DNA of 64,000 nt from IMG/VR virus record IMGVR_UViG_3300021440_000013, positions 1-64,000 of that record. One strand, 5' to 3'. The notes beneath the pieces were generated by a model. It saw only the letters and a list, made by a program, of their open reading frames with translations, was not told where the DNA came from and ran no database searches. Shown piece after piece: positions 46,595-64,000 of the stretch. The position numbers and the translations under genes are program-made. The stretch's first letter is position 1, and every line of letters starts with the position of its first letter.

Positions 46595-46644
46595 AGGAGT
46601 TCTTTCAAATGGAAAGTATTCAAAACGGCTACCTAGGTGCATAC

Positions 46645-49710: not shown

Positions 49711-50307
49711 GTGGATAGTCTTCTTTACACGACTATGTTTACGCTACCCAGTCATCAAAAAGCAATGACCCTTTTGGCGATCGATCCGGGTTTAAATAAC
49801 ACGGGTGTCGCTGTTTTTAAGCTCAACCTAGATCCCTTTGAGATTGTGTCGATCAATGCGCTCACGCTTCAAGCACAGCGTTTGATTGATACGAGCGGGC
49901 TGGATGATGAAGACTACGCGGAGCGGGCACATAAACGTTACAGCATGGCGCATGCTTTAAAGTCAATTATCGTTCGAGAAAACCCATCAGCCATTGCGTG
50001 TGAGAGTCCTTTTTTCGATCGAAGAAAACCATCGAGCTTCGCGGTGTTGACAGAAGTGCTCATCACCTATTACGACACGGCGGTTAAGGTAAACCCAGCG
50101 GTCCGTTTCTCCTACGTGGAACCCCTCCTAGTTAAAAAGATTTTAGGCGTGGCAGGTCAAAAAGGCAAGGAGCCCGTTCGAGAATCTATGGAAAAACAAG
50201 ATTTTCTAAGTAAGTTAACGCAGCGTCTAGACGATCTGGATGAACACGCGGTTGACGCCATCGGGGTAGGGATCACGTACATTAAAGTTAAGAGCGGTCT
50301 GGTATGA
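49711..50307 (+). CDS. ruvC: RuvC-like Holliday junction resolvase
   Basis: LAIDPGLNNTG, IACESPF, VKK..G..G.K, DEHAVDAIGVG catalytic motifs. Confidence 0.85.
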   Translation: MDSLLYTTMFTLPSHQKAMTLLAIDPGLNNTGVAVFKLNLDPFEIVSINALTLQAQRLIDTSGLDDEDYAERAHKRYSMAHALKSIIVRENPSAIACESPFFDRRKPSSFAVLTEVLITYYDTAVKVNPAVRFSYVEPLLVKKILGVAGQKGKEPVRESMEKQDFLSKLTQRLDDLDEHAVDAIGVGITYIKVKSGLV

Positions 50308-50413: not shown

Positions 50414-50884
50414 GTGTTATTTAAAGCAAGTGGTCCGGTGTCGACATCGGGATATATCATCGTTTTTTTACTGATAGCGTTAGCTGGGATGTATGGCTAC
50501 CAGCATTACACCGTAGAGTTAGCGAACTCAAAAGTCACTGAGACCAAAGCGGTTTCACAAGTTGATCTGATCCTGAGGCGTGCACGCGAGGCTGAAAGTA
50601 AACTCGAGACGGCTGAGGATGCGAACACCAACCTTAAGGGTGTCATTGAACTTCGTGATAAACTTGACGAAGTTAAGAGAGAGACGACACAGCTTCAAAA
50701 GATCGAAGTCAAAAAGACTACTGCTCACACCGAAGCCCTTAAAAAGACGCTGCCGATCGTTTCAAAAACAACCTTATCCATAGCAGAAGCGGATAAGGCA
50801 TCACTGATGCGCATTAACGCCATCTGGGATGCATACTGCTATCCAACTCAACCCGGTGTAAACTGTACGGAACAAGAACAATGA
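50414..50884 (+). CDS. i-spanin (Rz-like)
   Basis: N-terminal TM, coiled coil, C-terminal IWDAYC..C; overlaps a lipoprotein gene. Confidence 0.75.
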   Translation: MLFKASGPVSTSGYIIVFLLIALAGMYGYQHYTVELANSKVTETKAVSQVDLILRRAREAESKLETAEDANTNLKGVIELRDKLDEVKRETTQLQKIEVKKTTAHTEALKKTLPIVSKTTLSIAEADKASLMRINAIWDAYCYPTQPGVNCTEQEQ

Positions 50885-51228
50885 AAACACTTCTTTTGAT
50901 CAGTTTGGTTTTTCTTCTGTCCGCTTGCGCAACGGTCGAACCCCCTAAAGTGTTTATTCAAAAAGAGATCCAGCTTTTTGAACCCAACCCGAGTTTCTTG
51001 GAGCCGTGTATTAAGCCCAAACCGCCCGCGGTTGACACCTTCATGATGGCTTCTGTAAAAGAACGTGAAGACCTTTTAGCGCGTTTAATCCTTGATCAGT
51101 ATAAGTCAATCACTCTGTGTAATATACAGCTCTCGAGTCAGCGTGACCAGCTCCAAAAAGAAAGAGATCTCGTGAAGAAACATAACGAAGACGAAGCGCT
51201 TCGCATGCGAGCCTATAAAGAAAGGTAA
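50881..51228 (+). CDS. o-spanin (Rz1-like lipoprotein)
   Basis: Signal peptide with LSAC lipobox, Pro-rich segment, C..CN motif. Confidence 0.8.
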   Translation: MKTLLLISLVFLLSACATVEPPKVFIQKEIQLFEPNPSFLEPCIKPKPPAVDTFMMASVKEREDLLARLILDQYKSITLCNIQLSSQRDQLQKERDLVKKHNEDEALRMRAYKER

Positions 51229-52375: not shown

Positions 52376-54301
52376 TTAAATGTGAATTACTAAACTTCCT
52401 GCCTCATCACCGCCATTCTGTGTAAGATAAGCGATAAAGCCCATTGTGCCATCATAACTCAAATAGAGACGGTAGCCAAAGTAGCTGTTTGGGTAGGTCG
52501 CGGGTGGCGTGAACTTGTTCGAGAAATTGAACGCCGTTCCATCGAAAGTATAGACATAAACTTCACCTGAGTTGACATACGGGGTTTGTTTAAGATTAGC
52601 GACGAGCATCTTATTACCCTTAAACTCAACCCGCCCACCAAACTTATCGTTTGACGCCAGATCGTTCGGAACGATCTTCTGTACCTGAGTCCACGTAGTG
52701 CCACTGCGTTTAAAAACATAGATCGCGCCATTAGGCGTATTAGCCGTGGGGTAACACCCTGTGACAACGATGTTTCCGTCACTAGAAAGACCTCCGCTGC
52801 GGGCGCTAAGCATTTTTGAAGTCTCGGAATCAGAGGCTACGAGCTTAGCTTGCTCACTCCATGTTGAACCCGTTCGGGTGTAAATGTAAATGCATCCCGC
52901 GTCTATAAAACCGGAGATATCTGCACCGTGCGCTCCAGCGGCTAGAGTATTTCCATCGCTTGAAAGCGAGAGAAGCTGCCACGCCATATCCTGCCATTGG
53001 TCTGTCTGGGACGGGGAGACTTTAGATTGGAGCGTCCATGTGTTGGAAACGAGGGCGTAGATATACACCGCCCCCTTACCAGCGTCAGCATATGCAGCAC
53101 CTATAGCTATTGTGGTGCTGTCTCGAGAAATTACGGCGGTTGAGCCGTAATGTGCATCGGGCAATAGGTCAGACGGAGTGAGTTTCTGGACAAATAACCA
53201 CACATCCCCTGTACGAGAATAAATGTAAGCGGAACCTTTGTTGATAGCAGTGCCTGTCCAAGCCGGCGCGCAGATAACAGCCAGCGTTCCTTCCGGGTTC
53301 ATTGCCACCCAAAGACCAAACATTTCAGAGGTCAGTGGAACAGGTGCTTTAATGTACTGCTTGTTAGTGTAAACGCCGTTGACGCGTTTATAAAAATAGA
53401 CCGCACCACTATCTAAAGCAGTGTTATCGTCGTTATACGCACCGATAAGGATGTAGTCTTTGTCGTCACTTACAGCAAAGCTGTTGCCAAAACGACTATC
53501 TGGGTAATAGTTCTGCGCAACAAGGCGTTGAATCTCAGTGTTAATCAAACCGTCGTTCCCGGTGGTAAAAGCCACCGGGGTACTCCACGCACTCACCAGA
53601 CCACTTTGGCTCCGGTAGCGGCAACGTACAAAATGTTGGGTTAATTCTTTTATATAGGTAGGCGCCCATTGCGTTAAATCGTTCGAGTTGTAGACACTTT
53701 CAAGGAGTTGATTAAACTCCGTGTTTAAACTAAGCTGCCAGTCACTTCCACTATGTACCGCGTTAGTTTGATCGAGGTTAAAAGTTGACGCAACGATTAA
53801 TACCTTTGAGAAAGAAATCGTGTCACCATTTAAAGGTGACTCAATAACAGGGGTTTCAATCTCAGGCAGAATGATCTGAATGGGATAAGTGCGGCCGTTG
53901 ATGATGATCGCACCGGGTCCTGGTGTCGAGTTTGCCGTGAAGGTGATGACATCCACCTCTCGACTGAGCACTCCGCCTAGACCGATCGCTGTGTAGATCG
54001 CTGAGGTGTCGTAATTGGTGATCGTGTACTGGACGGTTTTGGTCGTGATGACTTGATCTGGTCCAAAGAGGCTCGGAATACTTGGGTCAGAGATCTCAGG
54101 TGGGAAGATATCGCGGGGTAAGAAACCCTGTGCATCGCGCGCAACCGCGCCATTCGGTTTATTAAGGTCTTCCGAACCCAAAAGACGAAGTTTAGCACGC
54201 GCACCCTTAGCGCTAACGCTCCCGGTGCCGCCCTGTTCGATAGGAAGCGCCTCGAGATCACTAAGTTCAGGTCCAAACAAAAAACGGGTCTTAATATCCA
54301 T
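52376..54301 (-). CDS. Tail fibre/receptor-binding protein: GGTG fibre motif + Fn3-like + FG-GAP beta-propeller
   Basis: PIEQGGTG..ARAKL; DWQLS..HFVRCRY..SAWS..FTT; ~7 FG..VA.S.DG..GA..GAVYIY repeats. Confidence 0.75.
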   Translation of the reverse strand: MDIKTRFLFGPELSDLEALPIEQGGTGSVSAKGARAKLRLLGSEDLNKPNGAVARDAQGFLPRDIFPPEISDPSIPSLFGPDQVITTKTVQYTITNYDTSAIYTAIGLGGVLSREVDVITFTANSTPGPGAIIINGRTYPIQIILPEIETPVIESPLNGDTISFSKVLIVASTFNLDQTNAVHSGSDWQLSLNTEFNQLLESVYNSNDLTQWAPTYIKELTQHFVRCRYRSQSGLVSAWSTPVAFTTGNDGLINTEIQRLVAQNYYPDSRFGNSFAVSDDKDYILIGAYNDDNTALDSGAVYFYKRVNGVYTNKQYIKAPVPLTSEMFGLWVAMNPEGTLAVICAPAWTGTAINKGSAYIYSRTGDVWLFVQKLTPSDLLPDAHYGSTAVISRDSTTIAIGAAYADAGKGAVYIYALVSNTWTLQSKVSPSQTDQWQDMAWQLLSLSSDGNTLAAGAHGADISGFIDAGCIYIYTRTGSTWSEQAKLVASDSETSKMLSARSGGLSSDGNIVVTGCYPTANTPNGAIYVFKRSGTTWTQVQKIVPNDLASNDKFGGRVEFKGNKMLVANLKQTPYVNSGEVYVYTFDGTAFNFSNKFTPPATYPNSYFGYRLYLSYDGTMGFIAYLTQNGGDEAGSLVIHI

Positions 54302-54315
54302 GGTTGAATTACTCC

Positions 54316-55548
54316 TTAAGAATACGCACCCAGCTCAAGGAGAACACCTTGGCTATAGTGATAAGGCTGTTGACAATACATCTGGTCGGTGATGTTTTCA
54401 AGGGTATCGCGGGCTTGAAGGGTATGGACGTAGTTCCGATAGTAGCTATCGACCACTGTCACCGACCACACCCCGTCTTCTTTGACTTTCCAATACTCTG
54501 CAAGTCGACCATGACCAACGATAAGTGGATAGGTCGGATCCTGATAGGTACTAAAGATACCTGGAGACTGTATTTGACGAATGCTGATTTTATTAGAAAA
54601 GAGGTTGGGTGTGTCGATAACGACCAAGAAACTCTGTGAAAGCGTCAAGTACCGCTTAAGGACTGCGTCACTATAGACTTCATCGAGATTAATGAGTCTG
54701 TCACTAAGCTCACTCTGGGTGAGCTTAAGTGGACTCAAGTCGATATATTGACGTGCCTCAAAGAGTCGTTCGAGGTAGGGGAGTTGGTTGATATCGAGCT
54801 CAAAGCTTTTATCGCCCGTCTGATAAAAGATGTTCTCTTGCGGCAAAACCATCACGCCGGCTAAGACCAAGATGACGGATTTATGCGTAAGATCCTCTTC
54901 AACAGAGAAGAGGATCTTATCTTTCAGATGCATGTTAGGGCGTGAGGTGATCTTTTCAGGATCAAGCTTAACTTTTGTAACGGCACCGATGTCTAAGAAG
55001 CTCGTTAAACCAAAGTGATTGTGGTTGCAGATTCGGCTACTGACACCCCCGTCGACGATGTAAGCAACTTGGCCATCCGTGTCGGTCATGTGGTAAAAAC
55101 CATTGACCGACACCAGCGCATGACTATGGATCAGTGAGAGGTCCGTGTCAAACTGAGGGCGCGTCAAAACGATGTCGGGTAGTTCTTCACGCGGATAGTT
55201 TTCAGGTGTCACAAAGCCGCGCTTAGCTAAATGTGTCTGATAGCAGGCCCGGTGCATATCGCCATACTTAACGTAGCTTACCTTTTGATCAGGTAAGCTT
55301 GCAAGCGTATCGAGTGTTCGGTTCCCTAAGACTTGAAGTAAGACATTCAGGGTGTTGCCATACGTGGCGTATTCGTCTCGAAGCTGCTCCATATTGACAA
55401 AAACATCTTCGCCAGAAAGATTCAACGTAAGGATGATTCTTCTATAATTCAAAAACAAATTGATCACCAACTCATTTCCGAGACTGGGCGAAACCCATTG
55501 ACTCGCACTTTGGTTGGGTAGTGCGTGCGCTCTAACGAGGCTGTACAT
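54316..55548 (-). CDS. Virion structural protein (gp130-like)
   Basis: ALVSVNGFYH, YLTLSQSFLVVID motifs; inside the fibre cluster. Confidence 0.6.
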   Translation of the reverse strand: MYSLVRAHALPNQSASQWVSPSLGNELVINLFLNYRRIILTLNLSGEDVFVNMEQLRDEYATYGNTLNVLLQVLGNRTLDTLASLPDQKVSYVKYGDMHRACYQTHLAKRGFVTPENYPREELPDIVLTRPQFDTDLSLIHSHALVSVNGFYHMTDTDGQVAYIVDGGVSSRICNHNHFGLTSFLDIGAVTKVKLDPEKITSRPNMHLKDKILFSVEEDLTHKSVILVLAGVMVLPQENIFYQTGDKSFELDINQLPYLERLFEARQYIDLSPLKLTQSELSDRLINLDEVYSDAVLKRYLTLSQSFLVVIDTPNLFSNKISIRQIQSPGIFSTYQDPTYPLIVGHGRLAEYWKVKEDGVWSVTVVDSYYRNYVHTLQARDTLENITDQMYCQQPYHYSQGVLLELGAYS

Positions 55549-55664
55549 ACCGATTCCTTTTTAACAAGCTTGTTTATGAGGGTGAGAAGCCGCTATCTTG
55601 TGACAATGAAAGCTTATTAATATGCTTTCTCTTTGATTAAAACGCCTTCTAAAGGAGAATCTCG

Positions 55665-56396
55665 GTGAGTAGTGTTACCTATCCGTTTGATTCATCGGGG
55701 GTAGCCCCTGAGAATCTCGTGGCAAACGAGCTCCATACGGTAACTGCGATCAACGCCGTCCCGTACCGCATCCTCATCCCTATCTTTGCACCATTTTATC
55801 TCCACAATCTCAAGCTGGAGCACGTCGACTTGACAGGTGTTGTAAAACCCCTGGATGAAGGCGTGGATTTTTATCCTTCGCTTCCTTATATGGCGGCGAC
55901 GCGATCGATCGGTCAGTATCTGTATGGCGGTCTTGTCTTTAACAACGATTTGATGAATGGCACGATCCGCGTTACCTATCAGACGCTGGGGGGTGAGTGG
56001 TGCGCCGATGTAGACTACGTTCACGGCCAGCTCCTTGAAAGTATCTACAACTCGCGTGTCGTCTGGTGGGATCAAATCACCGATAAACAGGGCGTCTTTC
56101 CGCCGATTGAACACAGTCATGATGTAGGGAGTTTTTATGGTCACACGGAGCTTCTGCTGCGCTTAGAAGCGATCCGTGAAGCGATCATGACCGCACCTGC
56201 TTCGGCGCCGGCATCGTATCTTGCACATCTTCTGGATAGCCAAAACCCACACCAGACCAATAAAGCCCAGGTCGGTTTGGGTAACGTACCCAACCTGGCG
56301 CTTGCAACCGACGCTGACGTAGCAAATGCGCTTTTTGAAGACAAGTTTATCACCTTGCGTCAAGTGCTTTTGCTCATGGGTAGAACGCCTCAGTAA
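55665..56396 (+). CDS. Tail fibre anchor-type protein
   Basis: YPFDSSG..NL..E.H, P.FAPFY, YQTLGG, NPHQTNKAQVGLGNV fibre repeat. Confidence 0.7.
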   Translation: MSSVTYPFDSSGVAPENLVANELHTVTAINAVPYRILIPIFAPFYLHNLKLEHVDLTGVVKPLDEGVDFYPSLPYMAATRSIGQYLYGGLVFNNDLMNGTIRVTYQTLGGEWCADVDYVHGQLLESIYNSRVVWWDQITDKQGVFPPIEHSHDVGSFYGHTELLLRLEAIREAIMTAPASAPASYLAHLLDSQNPHQTNKAQVGLGNVPNLALATDADVANALFEDKFITLRQVLLLMGRTPQ

Positions 56397-56453
56397 TACA
56401 AAATCCATTCTCATCTTTTTAAAACTTCTTCAAAGATACCGGAGTATACAAAC

Positions 56454-56762
56454 ATGAGCGGTCTTAAGAACAAACTGATTTCCGATGGCACTGTCCAGCT
56501 TCTGGGTACGGTAAGCGACAGCGTCCTGTTTTCCCTGACGACGATCCGGGCCGTGAACCCAACCGCCACGGTTAAAGAGATCACGATCTGGGTCTCTACG
56601 TCACCGACGCCAAGCGACGTTGATTTGGTTGAAGCACCGACGAGCCTTACGCCCAAGGGCCGGTACGAGCAGAACAACCTGCAACTCTCTCCGGGTGAAA
56701 AAGTCTTTGTGTTTGCCCCGGCAGGCGTGGTCTTTCGCATGGAAACCGTCGACGAAGCTTAA
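56454..56762 (+). CDS. Small beta-rich virion protein
   Basis: 102 aa, GGAG SD. Confidence 0.6.
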   Translation: MSGLKNKLISDGTVQLLGTVSDSVLFSLTTIRAVNPTATVKEITIWVSTSPTPSDVDLVEAPTSLTPKGRYEQNNLQLSPGEKVFVFAPAGVVFRMETVDEA

Positions 56763-56794
56763 CTCTTCTCGTTTACGCTTTGGAGGATTAAGCT

Positions 56795-57757
56795 ATGCCG
56801 AGACAGTTGCAGCAAGCGGATCCCTTTATCACTAACTTCACCGATGTCGCCTCCGTTGACAAAGGCGGTACGGGAAGTACCAGTGTGGAGGGTGCCGTAC
56901 AAAACCTCGGTGGGGTCTCACGCGATCTTTTGGGAGTGCCAAACGGTATCCTTCAGACCGACGAACGTGGATTTATCCCTACCGCGGTTCTAAGAGAAGC
57001 GGGCTTTACGATCGGCTACGCGCTTGAAGGACCCGAGTCTCTTACTCACGGTAATGTCAGTGTTTTTCGCATCACTAACTTTAACAGCTTAGCGAAACCC
57101 GTGGTCTCTGTTGACCATGGTTCGGTGAGTGTGGTGGGTGAAGAGATCTTTATCACCGCGCCTCTTTTTGGCGACGCGGTAGTTTTAACCGTTAATGACC
57201 GGCGGATCACCCTTCCGATTTATCAGGATGGGCCCATCCCGCCTAAGATCGTTTATCCGGAAGCGGGTCTAAAGATCCGTAAACGCTCTACGATCGTGTG
57301 TCGTGCGTTTCACAGTGAACCTGAAGCATACAGTGCATGGACGCCTATCGATGCAGTAGGCGGGCTCTATGCCCCTGTGCCGAGCTTGGCAAGCGGTATC
57401 GAAGTGCTGGGTAAACGAGGTCAAGCGGGTGCGGCCTATGTCCGCACTCAGGTAGGCACACACCAGCTCGGTGAGTCGATCACTCGGCGCCGTATCTTTA
57501 AGACACAGGACTCGGAGTTCTATTTCTTTAAGTCAGGTAGTGGTGAGATGCGTTACCGCTGGATCTACCCGATCGCTGAACATGTTTCGACCGATTGGGA
57601 AGTGGCGACCGACAGCGCATTTAGTCAAATCGTTTTTAGTCGCTACTACGATACAGAAAACCTGACCACCTGTGAAGTGAATCTACCGGAAGGGGCTTAC
57701 TTTGTGAGAACGCGCTTTAATGGGCGGCTTGCAGGGGGTACTCCGATTCAAAGTTAG
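56795..57757 (+). CDS. Tail fibre adaptor (GGTG motif + C-terminally incomplete Fn3-like domain)
   Basis: VDKGGTG..GAVQNLG; paralogous to the N-half of 52376..54301 but ends after YFVRTRFNG. Confidence 0.7.
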   Translation: MPRQLQQADPFITNFTDVASVDKGGTGSTSVEGAVQNLGGVSRDLLGVPNGILQTDERGFIPTAVLREAGFTIGYALEGPESLTHGNVSVFRITNFNSLAKPVVSVDHGSVSVVGEEIFITAPLFGDAVVLTVNDRRITLPIYQDGPIPPKIVYPEAGLKIRKRSTIVCRAFHSEPEAYSAWTPIDAVGGLYAPVPSLASGIEVLGKRGQAGAAYVRTQVGTHQLGESITRRRIFKTQDSEFYFFKSGSGEMRYRWIYPIAEHVSTDWEVATDSAFSQIVFSRYYDTENLTTCEVNLPEGAYFVRTRFNGRLAGGTPIQS

Positions 57758-57775
57758 TGGAGTGTTAACAGATGC

Positions 57776-57810
57776 GAGTGACGGGCTTAACGGCCCGTCA
57801 CTCTTCTTTA
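57776..57810 (+). terminator. Terminator hairpin
   Basis: GAGTGACGGGC-TTAACG-GCCCGTCACTC TTCTTT. Confidence 0.75.
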
Positions 57811-57878
57811 ATGTTTAAAATAGGCTTGGGCAAATGGTGTGGTTGGGCGTATAAAACGCTTATTAAGAGATAAGGACA

Positions 57879-59768
57879 GTGGTGATGAAGACAATCGGTG
57901 TTGTGAAGACGGTGGGTTTTCCGAGTAACTTGGGTGCTGGTAAACTTGCTTTGGTTAAAGAAGACGGCCACCTGAACCTGGAATATAAAGGCACTCAGGA
58001 CACTAAGAGCATGCGGGCGAGAAGATCGATTCGTCTTAAAGGAGACGTCTCGATCCCACGAAGCTATCCTGGCCACCCCTACACCTATCAGTATTTGGTC
58101 GAGAACTACGACAGCTTTACCGAGTACAGCGGCTCTACAACGGCCGGCTCAATCGATGTGTCAGGTGAAGGCGTTAACCTTACTACACCGACGACGGGTG
58201 ATAGGCTCTATATCACGATCAATGGTGAAGTCTCACGCGTGATGCTTAGGCAAGCGGTGATTGGAAAACCCATCATCACCTACCCGTTAAACAACGGTGT
58301 CAATGCCCCTTTGGCGTTGGATGTGCTTTTGTCTGGCTATTTTCCGGAAGTTCCTTCTGAGCCCTTCGAGCTTGTTGAGTGGGTGATTGCGTCCGATATA
58401 AATTTCACACAAAACGTAAAGACTTATTCGAAGTCAAGCGCTACCCCACTTTTAAATCTTTCTATCTTTGGTCTATTCAGTAATACACTCCATTATCTTA
58501 GAGTAAGATTTAAAGGAATGCTCTCGGGTTATTCTGAATGGTCGGATACAGTGAGTTTCACTACGGTCTTTTCAGAGATTGTTGGTGTTGAGCAAACAAA
58601 ATTAATCGCAAACGATGGTATAGCCACCGATAACCTAGGTCGTTTTGTGGCGTTAAGTGGTGATGGTAACACCGCCGCATGTGCTGCACCCTACCGAGAT
58701 GATGTTGTAGCAAACTCTGGAGCAATCTACATTTATGTCCGGAATGGTGCTTCTTGGACTTTTCAAACAAAACTTTTAGTAAGTGATCCTACCGTAACTC
58801 TCACTGTGGGGTATAATCTAAAACTCTCTTACGACGGAAACACGCTTGCGATAGGTTCTCCCTTCTCTACTAATAACGGAGCAGGAAGTGGTGCATTCTA
58901 TATCTTTACAAGGAACGGCACGACTTGGAGTCAAGAAGCCAAAGTGTTTCCGGTCGACGGAGTCGCAAACGCTAATTTTGGCTATGCGTTGTCTTTAAGT
59001 CCGGATGGCAATACACTAGCAGTTGGGGCACGAACAGACGACGATTTAGGCACCAACTCAGGGAGTGTTTATCTTTATCTACGGTCAGGTAACACCTGGA
59101 GTAAACAGGCTAAACTGATCGCTGATGATGGCTCGAGTGGCCACGTATATGGTTGTTCTGTTGCTTTAAGTGGGGATGGCAGTACATTGGCAGTAGGGAG
59201 TCCTATTTCTAATGGTATCGTAAATGGATCAGGCTCTGTCTATATTTACATTTTAAGTGGATCGACGTGGATAAAACAGAGTAAACTCATTGCCAATGAT
59301 GGTGTAAACGGCGACAACTTTGGTTATGTAGTCTCACTTAGCGCAGATGGTTCAACCGTACTGATTGGTGCTCCGATTAAAACAACAAGTGGTTCTAATG
59401 GAGGGGGCGCATATATTTTCAAACGCGCAGGGATAAGTTGGTCCCAGCAATCCCATATATTACCCTTGGATAATGCAGCTGGTGATAAATTCGGCTATAC
59501 GGTTTCTCTTTCATATAACGGGCAACTGGCAGCGATTGGGGCGCCCTATAATAACAGCAAAGGAATAAACAGTGGATCCGTCTACATCTACACAGTGGTC
59601 AATACTGTATGGGATCAAAAGCTTAAACTTTCAGCCAGTGATGGCATTGCTGATGATAACTTCGGTATCTCAGTAAGCCTTAATCGAGATGGAAATCAAC
59701 TACTAATCGGATCATGGTATAGTGACCCTAAAGGCTCTAGTAGCGGAGCTGCATATATCTTCATCTAA
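57879..59768 (+). CDS. Tail fibre/receptor-binding protein: Fn3-like + FG-GAP beta-propeller
   Basis: HYLRVRFKG..SEWSDTVSFTT then ~7 repeats KLIA.DG...DNFG..VALS.DG.TLAVGA...SGSVYIY. Confidence 0.78.
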   Translation: MVMKTIGVVKTVGFPSNLGAGKLALVKEDGHLNLEYKGTQDTKSMRARRSIRLKGDVSIPRSYPGHPYTYQYLVENYDSFTEYSGSTTAGSIDVSGEGVNLTTPTTGDRLYITINGEVSRVMLRQAVIGKPIITYPLNNGVNAPLALDVLLSGYFPEVPSEPFELVEWVIASDINFTQNVKTYSKSSATPLLNLSIFGLFSNTLHYLRVRFKGMLSGYSEWSDTVSFTTVFSEIVGVEQTKLIANDGIATDNLGRFVALSGDGNTAACAAPYRDDVVANSGAIYIYVRNGASWTFQTKLLVSDPTVTLTVGYNLKLSYDGNTLAIGSPFSTNNGAGSGAFYIFTRNGTTWSQEAKVFPVDGVANANFGYALSLSPDGNTLAVGARTDDDLGTNSGSVYLYLRSGNTWSKQAKLIADDGSSGHVYGCSVALSGDGSTLAVGSPISNGIVNGSGSVYIYILSGSTWIKQSKLIANDGVNGDNFGYVVSLSADGSTVLIGAPIKTTSGSNGGGAYIFKRAGISWSQQSHILPLDNAAGDKFGYTVSLSYNGQLAAIGAPYNNSKGINSGSVYIYTVVNTVWDQKLKLSASDGIADDNFGISVSLNRDGNQLLIGSWYSDPKGSSSGAAYIFI

Positions 59769-59869
59769 AAGACCTAGGTCTGTTAGATGATGTGGTAAAA
59801 GGAATGATTGAGTTTTTAAAGAGGTGAGTTTAAAGACTCACCTCTATCACTTAACAAGGAGTGAGCAGT

Positions 59870-62800
59870 ATGTCGACATTGGTTGCAAGTGAATGGAGCG
59901 ATGCCGTTGAGTTTACGGTGCGTCCTTTGGGTGAAGGCTATTCAGAAGTGGCAAAGCTGATTCCGATCGAAGGCCAGTCTGACAGTAAATTTGGTCGAGG
60001 TTTGGCTGTCGATGGTGAGGGTGAGTTTATGCTCGCTCCGCTAATGCATTACAACACGCCGTATGTTAAGGCGGGTCGGGTAGATGTCTATCAGCGTTTA
60101 AACAACGTCTGGAAGCGTGTTACGACGATCCAGTCGCCTACGCCTGCGCTTAATGAAGGCTTTGGAGTCCACGCAGCGCTGTCCCGCGACGGCCTGACGG
60201 CCTATATCGGCGCAGAAGGCAATGCGGTAAAGGGATCTAACACGGGCTGCCTTTACATTTTTACCCGACCGACGAAGACGTCTAATAACTGGGTGTATCA
60301 GACGGTGCTTTATCCGGATGACCCCCAGATCAACGGCTACTTTGGAACCTCTGTTGCGGTTTCAAGCGATCAGAAGACCCTTGCGGTCGGTAAAGTCGAA
60401 GACCCGCGATACATAAACGCTGGTATTACTTCTGGTGCGATCTACATCTTTAAAAAAGGCACTGATGGTCTTTGGTATCAAAACCAAAAACTGGTGAGCA
60501 GTGATCTTGGCGGTACGGCACGTCTGGGTCGCGCCATAGCGCTCTCGGGCAATGGTAAAGAGTTGGTTTCCGTAGCGCCCCGCGTATATACCGAAATAAA
60601 CAACCCCTATAATAACACCATCTATCACTTTAGCTTGGTGGGGCCTGTTTACATCCAGACAGCTGTTACGCACTTTCCTGATTCCAAGGACGGTGTGGTT
60701 AATGGCGGTGGCGTGTGTCTTAATGAAGACGGCACGATTATGGCGGCGAGTAACAACTACGACGCCGCGCGTGGTGTGGCTTATACGGGCGACGTCTATA
60801 TCTTCGAGAAGACCGCTTTTTCAGTTTGGACACCCAAACAAAAAATCATCCCGAGAACGGATGCGGCACTCTTCGGAACTGACGTTGCTCTAACCAGCGA
60901 TGGCTCCATCTTGATGGTGGGTGCACGTCTTGACGATACGGCGTCGACCGACTCGGGTGCGATCTATTTTTATGACCGCATCAACGACGGTTTTCAATAT
61001 CAGCAATCTTTGCTACCAAAGACCCCCACTGCTGAAGACCGCTTTGGTCGCGCTATTGCGCTAAACAGCACCGGTGACATGATGATCGTTGGTGCTTTCT
61101 GTGACGACGATGACACGGACCCTACGACGTATCCTGGACTGGGTTCGGCTTACGTCTTTATTCGAAATGGCTCAACCTGGACACAAGTACAAAAGATCAT
61201 CCCTAGTGCCAAGACCGCTTGGGCGTGGTTTGGTATCGATGTGGCTGTAAGTCAGGACGGCGCGATCGCTGTGATCGGTTGTCCGGGTGAGTTGAGCGGT
61301 GGCGTCTCTAAAGGTGGTTTTTACTACTACAAGAATGTGAATGGCTCCTGGGTAGAGACCGCTAAGGTATTTTCGCCCGACGGTGTTTCTGGAGATCAGT
61401 TTGCTACATCTGTTACGCTTGACGCATCTGGAAGCTACCTTATTGTCGGTTGCGCGAAAGATGACACCGCTGCTTTAAACGGTGGTTCAATCTACATTTA
61501 CACACGCTCAGGTGACACCTGGACATTCCAACAAAAGATTACCAGCCCCGAATCCGAAGCTGAAGGTTACTTCGGCTATCGCACAGCGGTTAATGGCGAT
61601 GCTACCGCCATGGCGGTAGGCTGCTATTCTAAGGATGTTAGTGGGCTCACTGACTCAGGCGCCGTTTATTACTACACGCGTTCTGGATCAGCCTGGACAT
61701 ATCGTACGCGCATTACTTCACCACGCTCAGCTGCTGGCGCTGGGTTTGGGCTTGGTTTGGCAATGACGCAAGACGGCAACACGCTCTACGTGGGTGCCTT
61801 TAACGACCTGAATAAGGGTGCAGTATTTATCTTTAACCGTAATGGCTATGTCTGGAACTACGATCGTGAGCTGACTGATCCGCTCCCCATGAGCCTGGCC
61901 CGATTTGGTATTGGACTCGCACTCTCTGGCGATGGTTCGATTCTTGCTGTGGGTGCTGATAATGCTTCGGAAACCCTGCTTCGCGCAGGACGCGTTAACG
62001 TCTATATCAAACCCTCTACCTTCGAGCAGAAGCTTCTCACCGAGCCGTTCATTGAACGCTCTAAGTTCTATGCAGATGACACCAGTGCAGGAGACTATTT
62101 TGGTGTCTCCTGCACCTTAAACGCAGAAGGCGACTACGCGATCGTGGGTGCCTGCTATGACGCAGATAAGGGCACTAACGCAGGTGCCTGCTACGCGTTC
62201 AAGCGCGTAGGGCACAACTGGGTTCAGAAAGCCAAGTTTTATGGCCTAAATACTAAAGAAGGCGATCTTTTTGGCGTCGCGGTTTCGATGAACTCGGATG
62301 CGAACTTCTTGGTTGTTGGTGCACCGGTAGGTAGTACGGAGGGTCGAGTTAATAGCGGCGCGATCTATCTGTTTGATCGTGAAGGTGAGACGTGGCGTCA
62401 ACGTGGCTTGCCTTGGGCACATAGTGAAGCCATCGCTAACAACGGCCGGATCTTTGCTCGGTCGGTGGCCGTTAGTGATGATGGTGTTCACCTTCTTATT
62501 GCCGCCTCTGCGGCTGATCAGGCTCCTGGTGGTCCGGCGTCAGGACTGGTTTACTATGTAACCTATGACGGTTCTGATTTTACTGAGCGTCAGAAGTTCT
62601 GGAGTAGCACCGCAACGCAGAGTGACTACTTTGGCCATGGTCTTTCCATGAGCAAAGATGGTTTGATCGCAATCGTCGGTGCGCCTTATGATGATAATGG
62701 TGTCTTGACCGACGACGGCTCAGCCTTTGTCTTTACTCGGAGTGGTTACACTTGGACCCAGGAACAAAAACTGATTGCGCCTGAGGCAGCTTCAGGTATG

Positions 62801-64000
62801 ACGAGTCTTTGGACTTCCGCGATATCGGGAGACGGCAGCATCATTCTTCTCTCCAGTAATAACAGCGCTGGAATGGGTGCGTTTTATCTTTACAAGCGTG
62901 TTCTGAGTACCTACACGCTGGTTAAGAAACTTTACAGCAAGGATGGCCAGGCGGGAGACGCGCTTAGTTTTAGCTTGGCGCTAAACTACGACGGTGCGGT
63001 AGCGCTCTCTGGCGCGGTGGGTGACGACGATCGGGGTTCTTCCGCTGGCGCAGTCTACACATTTGGGACTGGTGATATCGTCGGAGAAGGGTATCGCCTT
63101 TGCAACACGATCTATTGCCCTGAAGATCAGCGTAGCGTGGGCGATAATTTTGCCGCTGGCGTTGCGCTCTCTGGCGACGGCAACTATGCATTAATCGGTC
63201 GAACCTTTGGCAATGCTAAAAACGGCGATTTCTTCGCATTTGAAAGAAGTGGGGTCGACTGGATCAGCAAAGGTAGTTTCACCGCAAACGATCTTTCTAA
63301 CACCGATTTGTTCGGACTGCAGATTTCAATGAGTTTAGACGCTCAGCATGCGGTCATATCGGCGCAAATGCAGAGTGCTTCATCTCAGCCTGAAGTAGGT
63401 TCAATTTACTACTTCACCCGCAGTGGCGACACCTGGATCCAACAACAAAAGATCGTTTGCCCGGATGTAGAAGCCTACGCTAACTTTGGTGCTGGCTTGG
63501 CAATCTCTGGAGACTCTCTTCACCTTTTAGTTGGTGCTGAAAATAAAGACGTTGGAGGAAACACCGTGGCGGGTAAAGTTTACTACTTTACCCGAAGTGG
63601 AAACACCTGGACACTTGCAAGCAGTTTTACTCAACCCACTGGGCCTGTCGAACCGTGGCGTTTTGGCGGCGGTATTGCGCTTAACTACACGGGTGATTAC
63701 GCCATGGTGGGTGGGGTCTTCACATCGCTAACGGGATACGCTTCCGGCGCAGTGAATGTCCTTAACCGCAGTGGAAACACCTGGACCGGAACAGGACTGA
63801 TTGAAAGCCCTGAAAAGAACAGTGAGTCAACTGCGTTTGGTATTGGTATTGCGATAAGCCGCGATCTTAAGATCGCACTCATCGGCGCTTCGATTGCAGA
63901 TGGACTTTATCGTGACGAAGGTGCGGTTTACCTCTATGAGCGTAACGCCATCACCTATAAGTGGGACTTCGTACGCAAAATCGCACGGCCATTCAGGAAT
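59870..64000 (+). CDS. Giant multi-propeller FG-GAP repeat protein (>1370 aa, 3'-truncated by the window)
   Basis: AAGGAG SD, ATG 59870 MSTLVASEWSDAVEFTV; no in-frame ORF ending inside the window is listed, and the same frame still reads as repeats at the end (YLYERN..WDFVRKI). Confidence 0.8.
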   Translation, partial: MSTLVASEWSDAVEFTVRPLGEGYSEVAKLIPIEGQSDSKFGRGLAVDGEGEFMLAPLMHYNTPYVKAGRVDVYQRLNNVWKRVTTIQSPTPALNEGFGVHAALSRDGLTAYIGAEGNAVKGSNTGCLYIFTRPTKTSNNWVYQTVLYPDDPQINGYFGTSVAVSSDQKTLAVGKVEDPRYINAGITSGAIYIFKKGTDGLWYQNQKLVSSDLGGTARLGRAIALSGNGKELVSVAPRVYTEINNPYNNTIYHFSLVGPVYIQTAVTHFPDSKDGVVNGGGVCLNEDGTIMAASNNYDAARGVAYTGDVYIFEKTAFSVWTPKQKIIPRTDAALFGTDVALTSDGSILMVGARLDDTASTDSGAIYFYDRINDGFQYQQSLLPKTPTAEDRFGRAIALNSTGDMMIVGAFCDDDDTDPTTYPGLGSAYVFIRNGSTWTQVQKIIPSAKTAWAWFGIDVAVSQDGAIAVIGCPGELSGGVSKGGFYYYKNVNGSWVETAKVFSPDGVSGDQFATSVTLDASGSYLIVGCAKDDTAALNGGSIYIYTRSGDTWTFQQKITSPESEAEGYFGYRTAVNGDATAMAVGCYSKDVSGLTDSGAVYYYTRSGSAWTYRTRITSPRSAAGAGFGLGLAMTQDGNTLYVGAFNDLNKGAVFIFNRNGYVWNYDRELTDPLPMSLARFGIGLALSGDGSILAVGADNASETLLRAGRVNVYIKPSTFEQKLLTEPFIERSKFYADDTSAGDYFGVSCTLNAEGDYAIVGACYDADKGTNAGACYAFKRVGHNWVQKAKFYGLNTKEGDLFGVAVSMNSDANFLVVGAPVGSTEGRVNSGAIYLFDREGETWRQRGLPWAHSEAIANNGRIFARSVAVSDDGVHLLIAASAADQAPGGPASGLVYYVTYDGSDFTERQKFWSSTATQSDYFGHGLSMSKDGLIAIVGAPYDDNGVLTDDGSAFVFTRSGYTWTQEQKLIAPEAASGMTSLWTSAISGDGSIILLSSNNSAGMGAFYLYKRVLSTYTLVKKLYSKDGQAGDALSFSLALNYDGAVALSGAVGDDDRGSSAGAVYTFGTGDIVGEGYRLCNTIYCPEDQRSVGDNFAAGVALSGDGNYALIGRTFGNAKNGDFFAFERSGVDWISKGSFTANDLSNTDLFGLQISMSLDAQHAVISAQMQSASSQPEVGSIYYFTRSGDTWIQQQKIVCPDVEAYANFGAGLAISGDSLHLLVGAENKDVGGNTVAGKVYYFTRSGNTWTLASSFTQPTGPVEPWRFGGGIALNYTGDYAMVGGVFTSLTGYASGAVNVLNRSGNTWTGTGLIESPEKNSESTAFGIGIAISRDLKIALIGASIADGLYRDEGAVYLYERNAITYKWDFVRKIARPFRN

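What the first reader, a model, noticed from the sequence alone, without database searches (positions are those of the whole stretch)
52376..64000. Tail-fibre arsenal built from integrin-like FG-GAP beta-propellers
Three paralogues carry ~55-aa FG..VA.S.DG..(V/I)GA..GAVY.(F/Y) repeats. Two hold roughly one 7-bladed propeller each, and one has >1370 aa of near-continuous repeats (three or more propellers). Linked GGTG and NPHxxKAQVGLGNV fibre motifs place them on the tail. Such propellers are atypical phage receptor-binding domains and may be lectin-like.
Basis: partly seen in the sequence, partly recalled or inferred. Interest (0 to 1): 0.6.

Follow-up and report, generated by a model that had tools for sequence, protein, structure and literature searches.

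The report
Jumbo-phage baseplate fibres tipped with FG-GAP propellers
An uncultivated freshwater nucleus-forming jumbo phage carries, where phiKZ encodes its baseplate fibres, four proteins ending in integrin-like FG-GAP beta-propellers; one is a 2,507-residue, 42-blade giant that appears to dock onto a separately encoded anchor protein by donating the missing last strand of the anchor's final domain.

Summary
Pfam FG-GAP_2 hits are very strong. A blade HMM finds exactly 7 blades in the 641-aa and 627-aa proteins. The third ORF runs past the window to genome position 67,393: 2,507 aa and 42 blades. A fourth 7-blade paralogue lies at 142 kb. AlphaFold2 (pLDDT 90.5) gives a ring that superposes on integrin alpha propellers (Z 42), but no blade has the integrin Ca2+ loop. 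The genome is a 217-kb chimallivirus (phiKZ-like). The propeller genes flank the homologue of phiKZ gp130, the baseplate protein under which phiKZ fibres attach, together with a gp131-N-like module. They therefore fill the gp131-135 fibre slot. This supports a tail location by synteny, not by experiment. The 320-aa anchor protein always ends just before the last strand of its FN3-like domain. The giant always begins with that strand (SEWSxxVxFTV). This holds in five sequenced loci; unsplit versions also exist, and a complex prediction passes its controls (0.67 against 0.00). Ligand, lectin activity and virion presence are untested. The partition into rings is uncertain: AlphaFold2 gives 6+8, not 7+7. 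Verdict: a new variant of the phiKZ-type fibre cluster.

The parts
52376..54301 (-). Paralogue A, 641 aa. Architecture: GGTG N-terminal anchor, Ig-like domain, complete FN3-like domain, then 7 FG-GAP_2 blades (aa 255-640). It starts 14 nt downstream of the gp130 homologue on the same strand.
   Evidence: Pfam E 3.6e-42; 7 blades; domain alignment A1
54316..55548 (-). Homologue of phiKZ gp130 (410 aa, phrog_3337). In phiKZ this is the outer-baseplate protein beneath which the peripheral fibres attach.
   Evidence: phmmer against PDB chain 9xqd_L PHIKZ130, E 2.2e-37 over residues 1-359; PHROG hit; role taken from PMC13250141
55665..56396 (+). gp131-N-like fibre-attachment module as a stand-alone 243-aa protein. 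It ends with the NPHQTNKAQVGLGNV motif (about 56244-56288).
   Evidence: phrog_2163/13857/23008 N-terminal matches. tblastn hits 185 phiKZ-like phages and covers the first ~229 aa of the 771-aa gene that follows gp130 in a phiKZ-type genome. A similar motif occurs in the gp132-like protein there.
56454..56762 (+). Small 102-aa ORF. A 101-110-aa ORF stands at this position in every relative. It is the positional counterpart of phiKZ gp132; its function is unknown.
   Evidence: Gene tables of relatives; no family hit
56795..57757 (+). Anchor protein, 320 aa. Architecture: MPRQLQ/GGTG N-terminus, Ig-like domain, then an FN3-like domain with an ~80-aa insert that stops before its last beta-strand. 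It has no propeller.
   Evidence: Alignments A1 and A3; family of 11 proteins, all 311-327 aa, down to 38-39% identity
57776..57803 (+). Intrinsic terminator after the anchor gene: 12-bp stem with 8 G-C pairs, followed by TTCTTT.
   Evidence: a terminator hairpin is conserved at the same place in relatives; metatranscriptome contigs break between 57757 and 57850
57885..59768 (+). Paralogue B, 627 aa from the ATG at 57885. Architecture: degenerate N-terminus without GGTG, Ig-like domain, complete FN3-like domain, then 7 very regular 57-aa blades.
   Evidence: Pfam E 2.3e-87 with 7 stretches; AlphaFold2 pLDDT 90.5; integrin alpha propellers at Z 42.3
59820..59861 (+). Hairpin (59820-59845) and AAGGAG ribosome-binding site (59856-61), 8 nt before the giant's ATG. 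Both are conserved in relative L016.
59870..64000 (+). Giant paralogue C. It continues to G000 position 67,393 and is 2,507 aa. Residues 1-20 are the orphan last strand of an FN3-like domain (SEWSDAVEFTV); 42 FG-GAP_2 blades follow.
   Evidence: N-terminal strand: S7, W9 and S10 invariant and E8 nearly invariant in 14 giants; synonymous change at these codons.

Best explanation
This is the peripheral baseplate-fibre gene cluster of an uncultivated freshwater chimallivirus, the equivalent of phiKZ gp130-gp135. Here the distal, presumably host-binding, ends of the fibres are integrin-alpha-type FG-GAP_2 beta-propellers.

Architecture (shown): the paralogues share a modular build of N-terminal anchor (GGTG block), Ig-like domain, FN3-like domain, then propeller(s). 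Three of them carry one 7-bladed ring. One carries 42 blades, enough for about six rings.

The split fibre (shown in sequence; binding inferred): the giant has no anchor of its own. Its first 20 residues are the last beta-strand of the FN3-like domain, and the rest of that domain is the C-terminus of the separately encoded 320-aa anchor protein. The two proteins are therefore proposed to join non-covalently by beta-strand complementation. Together they rebuild the architecture that unsplit paralogues have in one chain.

Attachment and function (inferred): the anchors are proposed to hang from gp131-N-like adaptor proteins docked under gp130 on the baseplate rim. The propeller arrays would act as multivalent adhesins for a host surface ligand, possibly a glycan.

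Shown versus inferred: family, fold, synteny and the conserved split are shown. Virion location, strand-complemented assembly and adhesin function are inferred.
For: Family and fold:
- Pfam FG-GAP_2 far above its cut-off.
- Blade counts of 7/7/7/42.
- AlphaFold2 pLDDT 90.5.
- Foldseek top hits are all integrin alpha, E 1e-16; VIA-align gives Z 42, rmsd 2.8 A, ~360 residues aligned, spanning the whole propeller.

Phage type:
- Chimallin, the phiKZ-type major head protein and related genes lie in the window.
- The record is 216,876 bp with direct terminal repeats.

Slot:
- gp129, gp128 and gp130 homologues at E 1e-95, 1e-95 and 2e-37.
- The 243-aa ORF matches the N-terminus of the gene that follows gp130 in phiKZ-type genomes.
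- phiKZ fibres are paralogue assemblies under gp130, and gp131 ends in a 7-bladed propeller (PMC13250141).

Modularity:
- The same Ig plus FN3-like module carries a different C-terminal domain in an unrelated viral contig.
- A second cluster at 139-144 kb repeats the design.

Conservation:
- The gene order is identical in L016/L017, L022, L021, L023 and one further contig.

Split joint:
- All 11 anchors end after Y[FY]xRx[RK] plus a short tail.
- The giants of all five sequenced loci begin M..V.SEWS....F.V.
- The strand is kept through synonymous change: 6 synonymous against 3 non-synonymous codons of 12 compared with L022.
- Unsplit proteins with the strand in place exist: the L021 minus-strand giant of 2,146 aa, P0150 of 3,686 aa, and the single-ring paralogues.
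- Complex prediction gave ipSAE 0.67 against a best control of 0.00. That mark was reached by 58 of 80 solved complexes and 2 of 110 mismatched pairs. The runs agree in at least 73% of contacts and the partner pLDDT is at least 81. These counts hold only roughly, because my own alignments were used. The interface is giant residues 2-20 against anchor residues 297-314 (antiparallel register), 143-165 and 261-276.

Expression hint:
- A freshwater metatranscriptome run holds the locus in contigs that break at the terminator, while the DNA contig does not break there.
Against: - There is no experimental evidence that any of these proteins is in the virion.
- The propeller proteins lack the gp131-like N-domain that phiKZ fibre subunits use. 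How the GGTG anchors attach is unknown, and no solved structure or PHROG family matches them.
- The complex prediction may only be re-assembling a domain topology it recognises. It shows that the two pieces fit, not that they bind.
- The RNA library may contain DNA.
- Top-face loops are only modestly more variable than the rest of the blade: 0.38-0.41 against 0.43-0.59, and one bottom turn is 0.33. There is therefore no clear signature of a receptor-binding surface.
- No ligand-binding or Ca2+ motif was identified.
Confidence: 0.62

Rival explanations
1. The proteins are virion-attached but are not host receptor binders. The propeller arrays could be general adhesins or decoration, holding the phage to particles, biofilm matrix or non-host surfaces. 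Alternatively they could be enzymes, such as polysaccharide-degrading propellers that clear capsule or slime.
For: Beta-propellers serve widely as scaffolds and catalysts (PMC8023676). The phiKZ atlas notes that the gp131 propeller fold is often associated with enzymatic activity. Cellular FG-GAP_2 relatives are large surface or secreted proteins with cadherin, FN3 and T9SS domains. No hypervariable binding face was found.
Against: All top structural matches are integrin ligand-binding heads, not enzymes. The position in the gp131-135 slot, and the variation in propeller number between relatives, resemble host-range modules.
Confidence: 0.2
2. The anchor/giant split is not an assembly joint. 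On this view the 320-aa protein is a self-sufficient short fibre or adaptor, and the giant's N-terminal strand is a retained remnant. The giant would then attach to something else, or be a non-virion protein.
For: Binding is only predicted. The anchor family keeps a variable short tail after the truncation point. The middle gene B lies between the two genes and has its own terminator and start.
Against: A useless remnant would not stay invariant (SEWS) down to 24% overall identity while its codons change synonymously. The truncation point of the anchor is conserved in all 11 members. In unsplit paralogues the two pieces are continuous. The predicted interface uses exactly this strand in the expected antiparallel register, and the controls score 0.00.
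Confidence: 0.13
3. The proteins are not virion components at all. They could be secreted or cell-associated proteins made during infection, for example to modify the host surface or for superinfection exclusion.
For: Some phage FG-GAP genes sit among metabolic or auxiliary genes, for example Vibrio phage nt-1 ORF127. No proteomic data exist for this phage.
Against: The N-terminal modules are shared with tail-fibre-like proteins. One paralogue is co-oriented and adjacent to the gp130 homologue. The S-TIM5 stand-alone FG-GAP protein is deposited as a virion structural protein (annotation only).
Confidence: 0.05

Closest known systems
phiKZ peripheral baseplate fibres (gp130 platform; gp131, gp133, gp134, gp135 paralogues; gp131 C-terminal seven-bladed propeller; PMC13250141; Sycheva et al. 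2012 as cited there)
   Same: It has the same virus group and the same genomic slot beside the gp128/gp129/gp130 homologues. A gp131-N-like module and a small gp132-position ORF are present. The distal ends vary between paralogues, and a seven-bladed propeller forms the tip.
   Different: The propellers here are FG-GAP_2 and are not detectably related to the gp131 propeller: hhalign probability is 0.04%, and Pfam gives only a weak RCC1-like hint for gp131. The gp131-N module is a separate 243-aa protein. The propeller proteins use a different GGTG/Ig/FN3-like stalk. One fibre protein has 42 blades and is split from its anchor.
Integrin alpha-subunit head and prokaryotic FG-GAP/VCBS-supercluster propellers (PMC8023676)
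   Same: It has the FG...GAP cage motif, 4-stranded blades, a 7-blade ring, Z 42 to integrin alpha, and several propellers combined with Ig-like domains, as in prokaryotic members.
   Different: There is no DxDxDG Ca2+ loop in any of the 63 blades. No beta-subunit partner is known. The context is a phage structural cluster and not a cell-surface protein.
Beta-propeller lectins of the same supercluster (Psathyrella velutina lectin, tachylectin-2; PMC8023676)
   Same: They belong to a related propeller supercluster.
   Different: Sugar-pocket residues were not compared. PVL keeps the Ca2+ motif that is absent here. No binding data exist.
Propeller-bearing receptor-binding proteins of other phages, and phage FG-GAP genes (S. 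aureus phage phi11 RBP, PMC4901313; Vibrio phage nt-1 ORF127; cyanophage S-TIM5 gp054)
   Same: Propellers do occur in phage host-recognition devices (listing). FG-GAP genes exist in a few cultured phages, and one is deposited as a virion protein.
   Different: Those FG-GAP proteins are short stand-alone propellers of about 400 aa with no fibre stalk, and they have not been characterised. The phi11 propeller is described in that paper as a platform domain of a different family. The detail that it is five-bladed is my own recollection and was not checked here.
Donor-strand complementation of chaperone-usher pili (own knowledge; not tested against a family model)
   Same: An Ig-like or FN3-like fold that lacks its last strand is completed by an N-terminal strand from the next subunit.
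   Different: There is no chaperone or usher. The system has two partners and is not polymerising. The strand pairs antiparallel with the preceding strand, as in the intact domain. There is no sequence relationship.

Membership tests
Pfam FG-GAP_2 (PF14312) | Repeats score above the curated gathering threshold (23 bits) | tested here: met
   142.7, 287.5 and 386.1 bits; 39 repeat matches in the genome
Integrin-alpha-type seven-bladed beta-propeller | Closed ring of seven 4-stranded blades that superposes on integrin alpha heads | tested here: met
   Met for the 627-aa paralogue: pLDDT 90.5; Z 42.3, rmsd 2.8 A, 357 residues aligned, model 234-629 against chain 1-598. For the giant the ring size is inconclusive: blades 7-14 model as one ring whose best matches are WD40 propellers that I recall as eight-bladed (Z 39, rmsd 2.1 A), against Z 27, rmsd 3.8 A for integrins.
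Integrin-alpha-type seven-bladed beta-propeller | Ca2+-binding Dx[DN]xDG-type loop between strands A and B (PMC8023676) | tested here: not met
   0 matches in 63 blades even with a relaxed pattern; the loop consensus here is S-x-D-G-x-T
phiKZ gp131-135 peripheral fibre paralogues | Encoded beside the gp130 baseplate-platform gene | tested here: met
   The gp130 homologue at 54316-55548(-) (E 2.2e-37) is flanked by the propeller genes
phiKZ gp131-135 peripheral fibre paralogues | Each subunit carries the gp131-like N-terminal attachment domain | tested here: not met
   That domain is found only in the 243-aa and 364-aa proteins. The propeller proteins have a different N-terminus with no PHROG or PDB match.
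phiKZ gp131-135 peripheral fibre paralogues | Propeller homologous to that of gp131 | tested here: not met
   hhalign probability 0.04%; no FG-GAP hit in a phiKZ-type gp131
phiKZ gp131-135 peripheral fibre paralogues | Physically present at the baseplate periphery of the virion | not testable with these tools
   Needs particles, mass spectrometry or cryo-EM
Strand-complemented (split-domain) subunit joint | One partner's domain lacks a strand that the other partner supplies | tested here: met
   Sequence level: alignments A1, A3 and A6. The anchor ends before the strand and the giant begins with it, in five sequenced loci.
Strand-complemented (split-domain) subunit joint | The two proteins actually bind through that strand | tested here: inconclusive
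   Prediction only: ipSAE 0.67 against a best control of 0.00 (mark reached by 58 of 80 solved complexes and 2 of 110 mismatched pairs), at least 73% contact agreement between runs, partner pLDDT at least 81. The interface is giant residues 2-20.
Beta-propeller lectins (PVL/tachylectin type) | Sugar-binding pockets between blades; carbohydrate binding | not tested
   No pocket comparison was possible without model coordinates; needs glycan arrays

The most novel reading that the evidence does not exclude
A clade of freshwater chimalliviruses builds a two-gene baseplate fibre. A giant array of 35-54 FG-GAP blades is plugged onto a small anchor protein by trans-complementation of a split FN3-like domain. 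This non-covalent, exchangeable joint would let propeller arrays of very different length be swapped at a fixed attachment point. The arrays would act as highly multivalent glycan-binding adhesins.
Probability: 0.45. Interest if true: 0.75.

Novelty: new variant of a known kind. Interest (0 to 1): 0.6.

Why it matters
How jumbo phages recognise their hosts is poorly understood. In phiKZ the distal parts of the twelve peripheral fibres could not be modelled at atomic level. This locus shows that the same slot can hold a different propeller family, multiplied up to dozens of blades. It also points to a simple way of coupling a very large receptor-binding module to a conserved anchor, which can be tested directly. 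If confirmed, it would add a new class of phage receptor-binding domain (integrin-like FG-GAP_2). It would also add a new assembly principle, a split-domain joint, of use for understanding host range and for engineering modular fibres.

Tried and rejected
- megablast of the locus against 50,697 phage records found no match.
- Recent tandem amplification of whole propellers is rejected. Blade identity is flat at about 0.26-0.29 at every lag, and the same position in different rings scores 0.262 against 0.272 for other positions.
- The 627-aa protein has no sequence match to any PDB chain. Nor does the N-terminal module of paralogue A. The anchor profile gives only a marginal hit, E 0.08, to a pyocin fibre.
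- Homology of these propellers to the gp131 propeller is rejected.
- I considered one long gene read through a frameshift, an intron or readthrough across anchor, B and giant, and rejected it. There is a strong terminator after the anchor gene. Genes B and giant have their own ribosome-binding sites and are in different frames. The same arrangement holds in all relatives. RNA contigs break at the terminator.
- Integrin-type Ca2+ sites are absent.
- 'Six 7-bladed rings' could not be confirmed. AlphaFold2 on blades 1-14 places a low-confidence linker at 373-377 and models blades 7-14 as one ring. Orthologues have 35, 42 and 54 blades, and 54 is not a multiple of 7.
- The loop-variability test for a binding face was inconclusive.
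- I looked for proteomic evidence for the S-TIM5 FG-GAP protein. The original paper is not in the searchable library, so only the deposited annotation is cited.
- A literature search for FG-GAP in phage tail fibres returned only two giant-virus papers. A search for beta-propeller receptor-binding proteins in jumbo phages returned none.
- The large representative-protein search was not used, because the family scans and the word search settled the family.


Full report
**1. Where the window lies**

The window is the first 64 kb of a 216,876-bp IMG/VR virus record with direct terminal repeats. It encodes a nuclear-shell protein (chimallin, phrog_4795, 2270-4126) and a phiKZ-type major head protein (7436-9607). 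It also encodes phiKZ-type polymerase, helicase and virion proteins. The closest cultured phages share only about 30-33% protein identity in a conserved virion protein. The phage is therefore a deep-branching, uncultivated chimallivirus, that is, a nucleus-forming jumbo phage. Near-identical DNA occurs only in freshwater metagenomes.

**2. The observation**

- Three ORFs in 52376-64000 carry the repeat. Pfam FG-GAP_2 (cut-off 23 bits) scores them at 142.7, 287.5 and 386.1 bits.
- I built an HMM from the seven 57-aa units of the 627-aa protein and iterated it on the paralogues. It finds 7 blades in 52376-54301(-) and 7 in 57885-59768(+).
- It finds 41 blades in the third ORF. A degenerate 64-aa C-terminal unit makes the 42nd.
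- The third ORF is cut by the window end. It runs to genome position 67,393.
- Its likely start is the ATG at 59870, 8 nt after an AAGGAG site. That gives 2,507 aa, the length under which the protein stands in the large protein collection.
- A fourth paralogue of 636 aa with 7 blades lies at 142362-144272.
- The blades of the giant are old and diverged, about 26-29% identical at every lag with no period-7 signal. The array is therefore not a recent amplification.

**3. Fold**

- AlphaFold2 was run on the 627-aa paralogue with a 52-sequence alignment. It gave mean pLDDT 90.5, all-beta, with four strands per unit repeated seven times.
- The best Foldseek PDB hits are all integrin alpha heads, E 1e-16.
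- VIA-align gives Z 42.3, rmsd 2.8 A and 357 aligned residues. Model residues 234-629 cover the complete integrin propeller.
- In the library of predicted viral structures the best matches are FG-GAP proteins of giant viruses and a few phage proteins.
- The likeness to integrins is in fold and in the FG/GAP cage motif only. None of the 63 blades has the Dx[DN]xDG-type Ca2+ loop; the A-B loop here reads S-x-D-G-x-T.
- A second model covers giant residues 1-842 (14 blades, pLDDT 80.1). It does not divide 7+7.
  - The only low-confidence linker between blades is at 373-377.
  - Residues 376-839 (blades 7-14) match ODA16, Sif2 and Sqt1 best, at Z 31-39 and rmsd 2.1-2.8 A. I recall these WD40 propellers as eight-bladed; that is my own knowledge and was not checked here.
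  - Integrins reach only Z 27 at rmsd 3.8 A.
- Orthologous giants have 35, 42 and 54 detected blades. '42 blades' is solid; 'six seven-bladed rings' is not.

**4. Genomic slot**

- Sequence searches against PDB chains identify three homologues of solved phiKZ virion proteins:
  - 43745-46642(-) is the phiKZ gp129 portal, E 2e-95.
  - 46609-48810(+) is gp128, E 3e-95.
  - 54316-55548(-) is gp130, E 2.2e-37 over residues 1-359.
- According to the 2026 phiKZ structural atlas (PMC13250141):
  - gp130 belongs to the outer baseplate periphery.
  - The attachment sites of the twelve peripheral fibres lie beneath it.
  - The fibres are hetero-hexamers of paralogues (gp131, gp133, gp134, gp135) that share a gp131-like N-terminal domain.
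  - gp131 ends in a seven-bladed propeller that is thought to contact the host.
- The 243-aa ORF 55665-56396(+) matches the first ~229 residues of the 771-aa gene that follows gp130 in a phiKZ-type genome. That gene is gp131 by position and length.
- The same ORF hits tail and virion PHROGs only with their N-terminal parts.
- It ends with NPHQTNKAQVGLGNV. A similar NPH...IGLGNV motif stands in the gp132-position protein of the phiKZ-type genome.
- So the propeller genes occupy the gp131-135 slot: one on the strand of gp130, 14 nt downstream of it, and the others opposite.
- The propellers themselves are not related to the gp131 propeller (hhalign probability 0.04%). A different propeller family fills the same architectural position.

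**5. Modular stalk**

- Alignment of the N-terminal parts shows a common build: an anchor block around GGTG (about 60 aa), an Ig-like domain (ITN[FY]D...), an FN3-like domain (DW...D..F...Y.VR.R...S.WS..V.FT), then the blades.
- The Ig plus FN3-like module also occurs in an unrelated viral contig with a quite different C-terminal domain. This is the usual pattern of fibre shafts with exchangeable tips.
- A second cluster at 139-144 kb repeats the design. It holds a fibre-like 252-aa protein, two small Ig/FN3-only proteins, a 364-aa gp131-N-like protein and the fourth propeller paralogue.

**6. The split fibre**

- The 320-aa protein at 56795-57757 has the anchor, the Ig-like domain and the FN3-like domain. 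It stops right after ...YFVRTRFNG, before the final S.WS..V.FT strand.
- The giant begins MSTLVASEWSDAVEFTV, which is exactly that strand.
- Between the two genes lie a strong terminator (57776-57803, 12-bp stem), the complete gene of paralogue B, a hairpin and a ribosome-binding site.
- The arrangement is not an accident of this genome:
  - The anchor protein has ten relatives of 311-327 aa, down to 38-39% identity. All end at the same point.
  - The whole gene order recurs in contigs L016/L017, L022, L021 and L023 and in one further contig: propeller gene(-), gp130(-), gp131-N-like, a ~105-aa ORF, the anchor, a ~620-aa propeller protein, then the giant.
  - The giants of all five sequenced loci start with M..V.SEWS....F.V.
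  - S7, W9 and S10 are invariant and E8 nearly so in 14 giants that are otherwise 24-70% identical.
  - The codons change synonymously: 4 synonymous and 0 non-synonymous of 12 against L016, and 6 and 3 against L022.
- Unsplit versions of the same architecture exist. They are the single-ring paralogues, a 2,146-aa giant in L021 and a 3,686-aa giant (P0150) in another phiKZ-like contig. In all of them the strand follows Y.VR.R within the same chain.
- Complex prediction on the anchor family alignment plus the giant's first 437 residues supports binding:
  - ipSAE is 0.67 (median of three runs) against 0.00 for the best of three controls.
  - In the tool's calibration that mark was reached by 58 of 80 solved complexes and 2 of 110 mismatched pairs. 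These counts hold only roughly, because my own alignments were used.
  - The runs agree in at least 73% of contacts, and the partner pLDDT is at least 81.
  - The confident interface is giant residues 2-20 only. They lie against anchor residues 297-314 in antiparallel register (302 with 15, 305 with 10-13, 308 with 7) and against 143-165 and 261-276 of the same domain.
- That is what trans-completion of the FN3-like domain predicts. It remains a prediction, and the model may simply recognise the intact domain topology.

**7. Expression hint**

A freshwater metatranscriptome run holds 94% of the sampled words of 56795-59768. Its contigs cover 55600-57757, 57850-58072 and 58024-61500. They break at the stop codon and terminator of the anchor gene, while the DNA run spans the whole stretch in one contig. 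This fits separate transcripts. However, contigs cannot prove transcription, and DNA may be present in the RNA library.

**8. Function**

What the propellers bind is unknown.

In favour of an adhesin or receptor-binding role:
- They lie in the fibre slot at the distal end of the proteins.
- The N-terminal stalk is more conserved than the propeller (0.55 against 0.47 identity to orthologues).
- Propeller number varies widely between relatives at three of the four positions: 578-646 or 2,146 aa; 2,013-3,177 aa; and 636 or 3,686 aa.
- Integrin-like, PVL and tachylectin-2 propellers belong to one supercluster, whose prokaryotic members often combine several propellers with Ig-like domains (PMC8023676).

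Against drawing a firm conclusion:
- Top-face loops are only slightly more variable than the rest of the blade.
- No pocket or metal site was identified.

**9. Rarity and novelty**

- Only 17 of 50,697 phage records give a tblastn match to the 627-aa paralogue. These are short stand-alone FG-GAP genes, for example in Vibrio phage nt-1 and cyanophage S-TIM5.
- The S-TIM5 gene is deposited as a virion structural protein. I could not check the underlying data.
- Thousands of cellular FG-GAP_2 proteins exist.
- Full-text searches found nothing on FG-GAP propellers as phage fibre tips.
- I therefore class this as a new variant of a known kind: the phiKZ-type paralogous baseplate-fibre cluster with a propeller tip. 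Three features are unusual:
  - The propeller family is different.
  - It is multiplied to 35-54 blades in one protein.
  - The split-domain joint between anchor and giant is conserved.

**10.

- Read laying was given 5,901 letters.
- Only genetic code 11 was used.
- The large representative-protein search was not needed.

Noticed in passing
window 2270-4126 (+): Chimallin (phage nuclear shell protein, phrog_4795, E 2e-69). It marks the genome as a nucleus-forming jumbo phage only distantly related to cultured ones.
   Followed up: partly
window 59870-64000 and beyond (model residues 1-842): AlphaFold2 divides the first 14 blades of the giant into 6 + 8, not 7 + 7. The linker is at residues 373-377, and blades 7-14 best match WD40 propellers that I recall as eight-bladed. 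Orthologous giants have 35, 42 and 54 blades.
   Followed up: partly
L016:11962-19115: In the closest relative (JGI sample 3300056623) the giant is called as two overlapping ORFs of 620 and 1,764 aa. The first ends in an out-of-frame tail and several blades are missing relative to this phage. This could be a real deletion or frameshift, or an assembly error.
   Followed up: no
G000 139199-144272 (L010:199-5273): A second fibre cluster. It holds a 252-aa protein with tail-fibre repeat hits, two ~190-aa proteins made only of the Ig/FN3-like module, a 364-aa gp131-N-like protein and the fourth FG-GAP paralogue. An SbcC-like gene follows.
   Followed up: partly
L021:1091-7531 (-) and L033:10001-21061: In relatives, positions that hold single-ring proteins here hold unsplit giants of 2,146 aa and 3,686 aa. 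Propeller number is therefore highly plastic at each fibre position.
   Followed up: partly
window 57757-57850: Metatranscriptome contigs stop exactly at the anchor gene's stop codon and resume about 90 nt later, bracketing the predicted terminator. The DNA contig is continuous across the gap.
   Followed up: partly
G000 70531-71850 (L009:11532-12851) and G000 69248-70063: About 3 kb downstream of the giant lies a transposase-like gene (phrog_4285, E 3e-20). A 271-aa gene whose counterparts in relatives carry an HDOD domain (PF08668) lies before it. Both are unusual items beside a structural cluster.
   Followed up: no
window 49711-50307, 50881-51228; G000 68511-69251: A RuvC-like resolvase, an Rz-like spanin hit and an endolysin-like gene bracket the fibre cluster. 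The RuvC and DUF7208 neighbours are syntenic with phiKZ-type genomes.
   Followed up: no
window 57885-58000 (N-terminus of the 627-aa paralogue): Paralogue B lacks the GGTG block but has its own conserved N-terminus (MK.I....T.GFP....GGKL.LVKEDGHLN.E.KG in relatives), modelled at low confidence (pLDDT 38-67). How this protein is anchored is unexplained.
   Followed up: no
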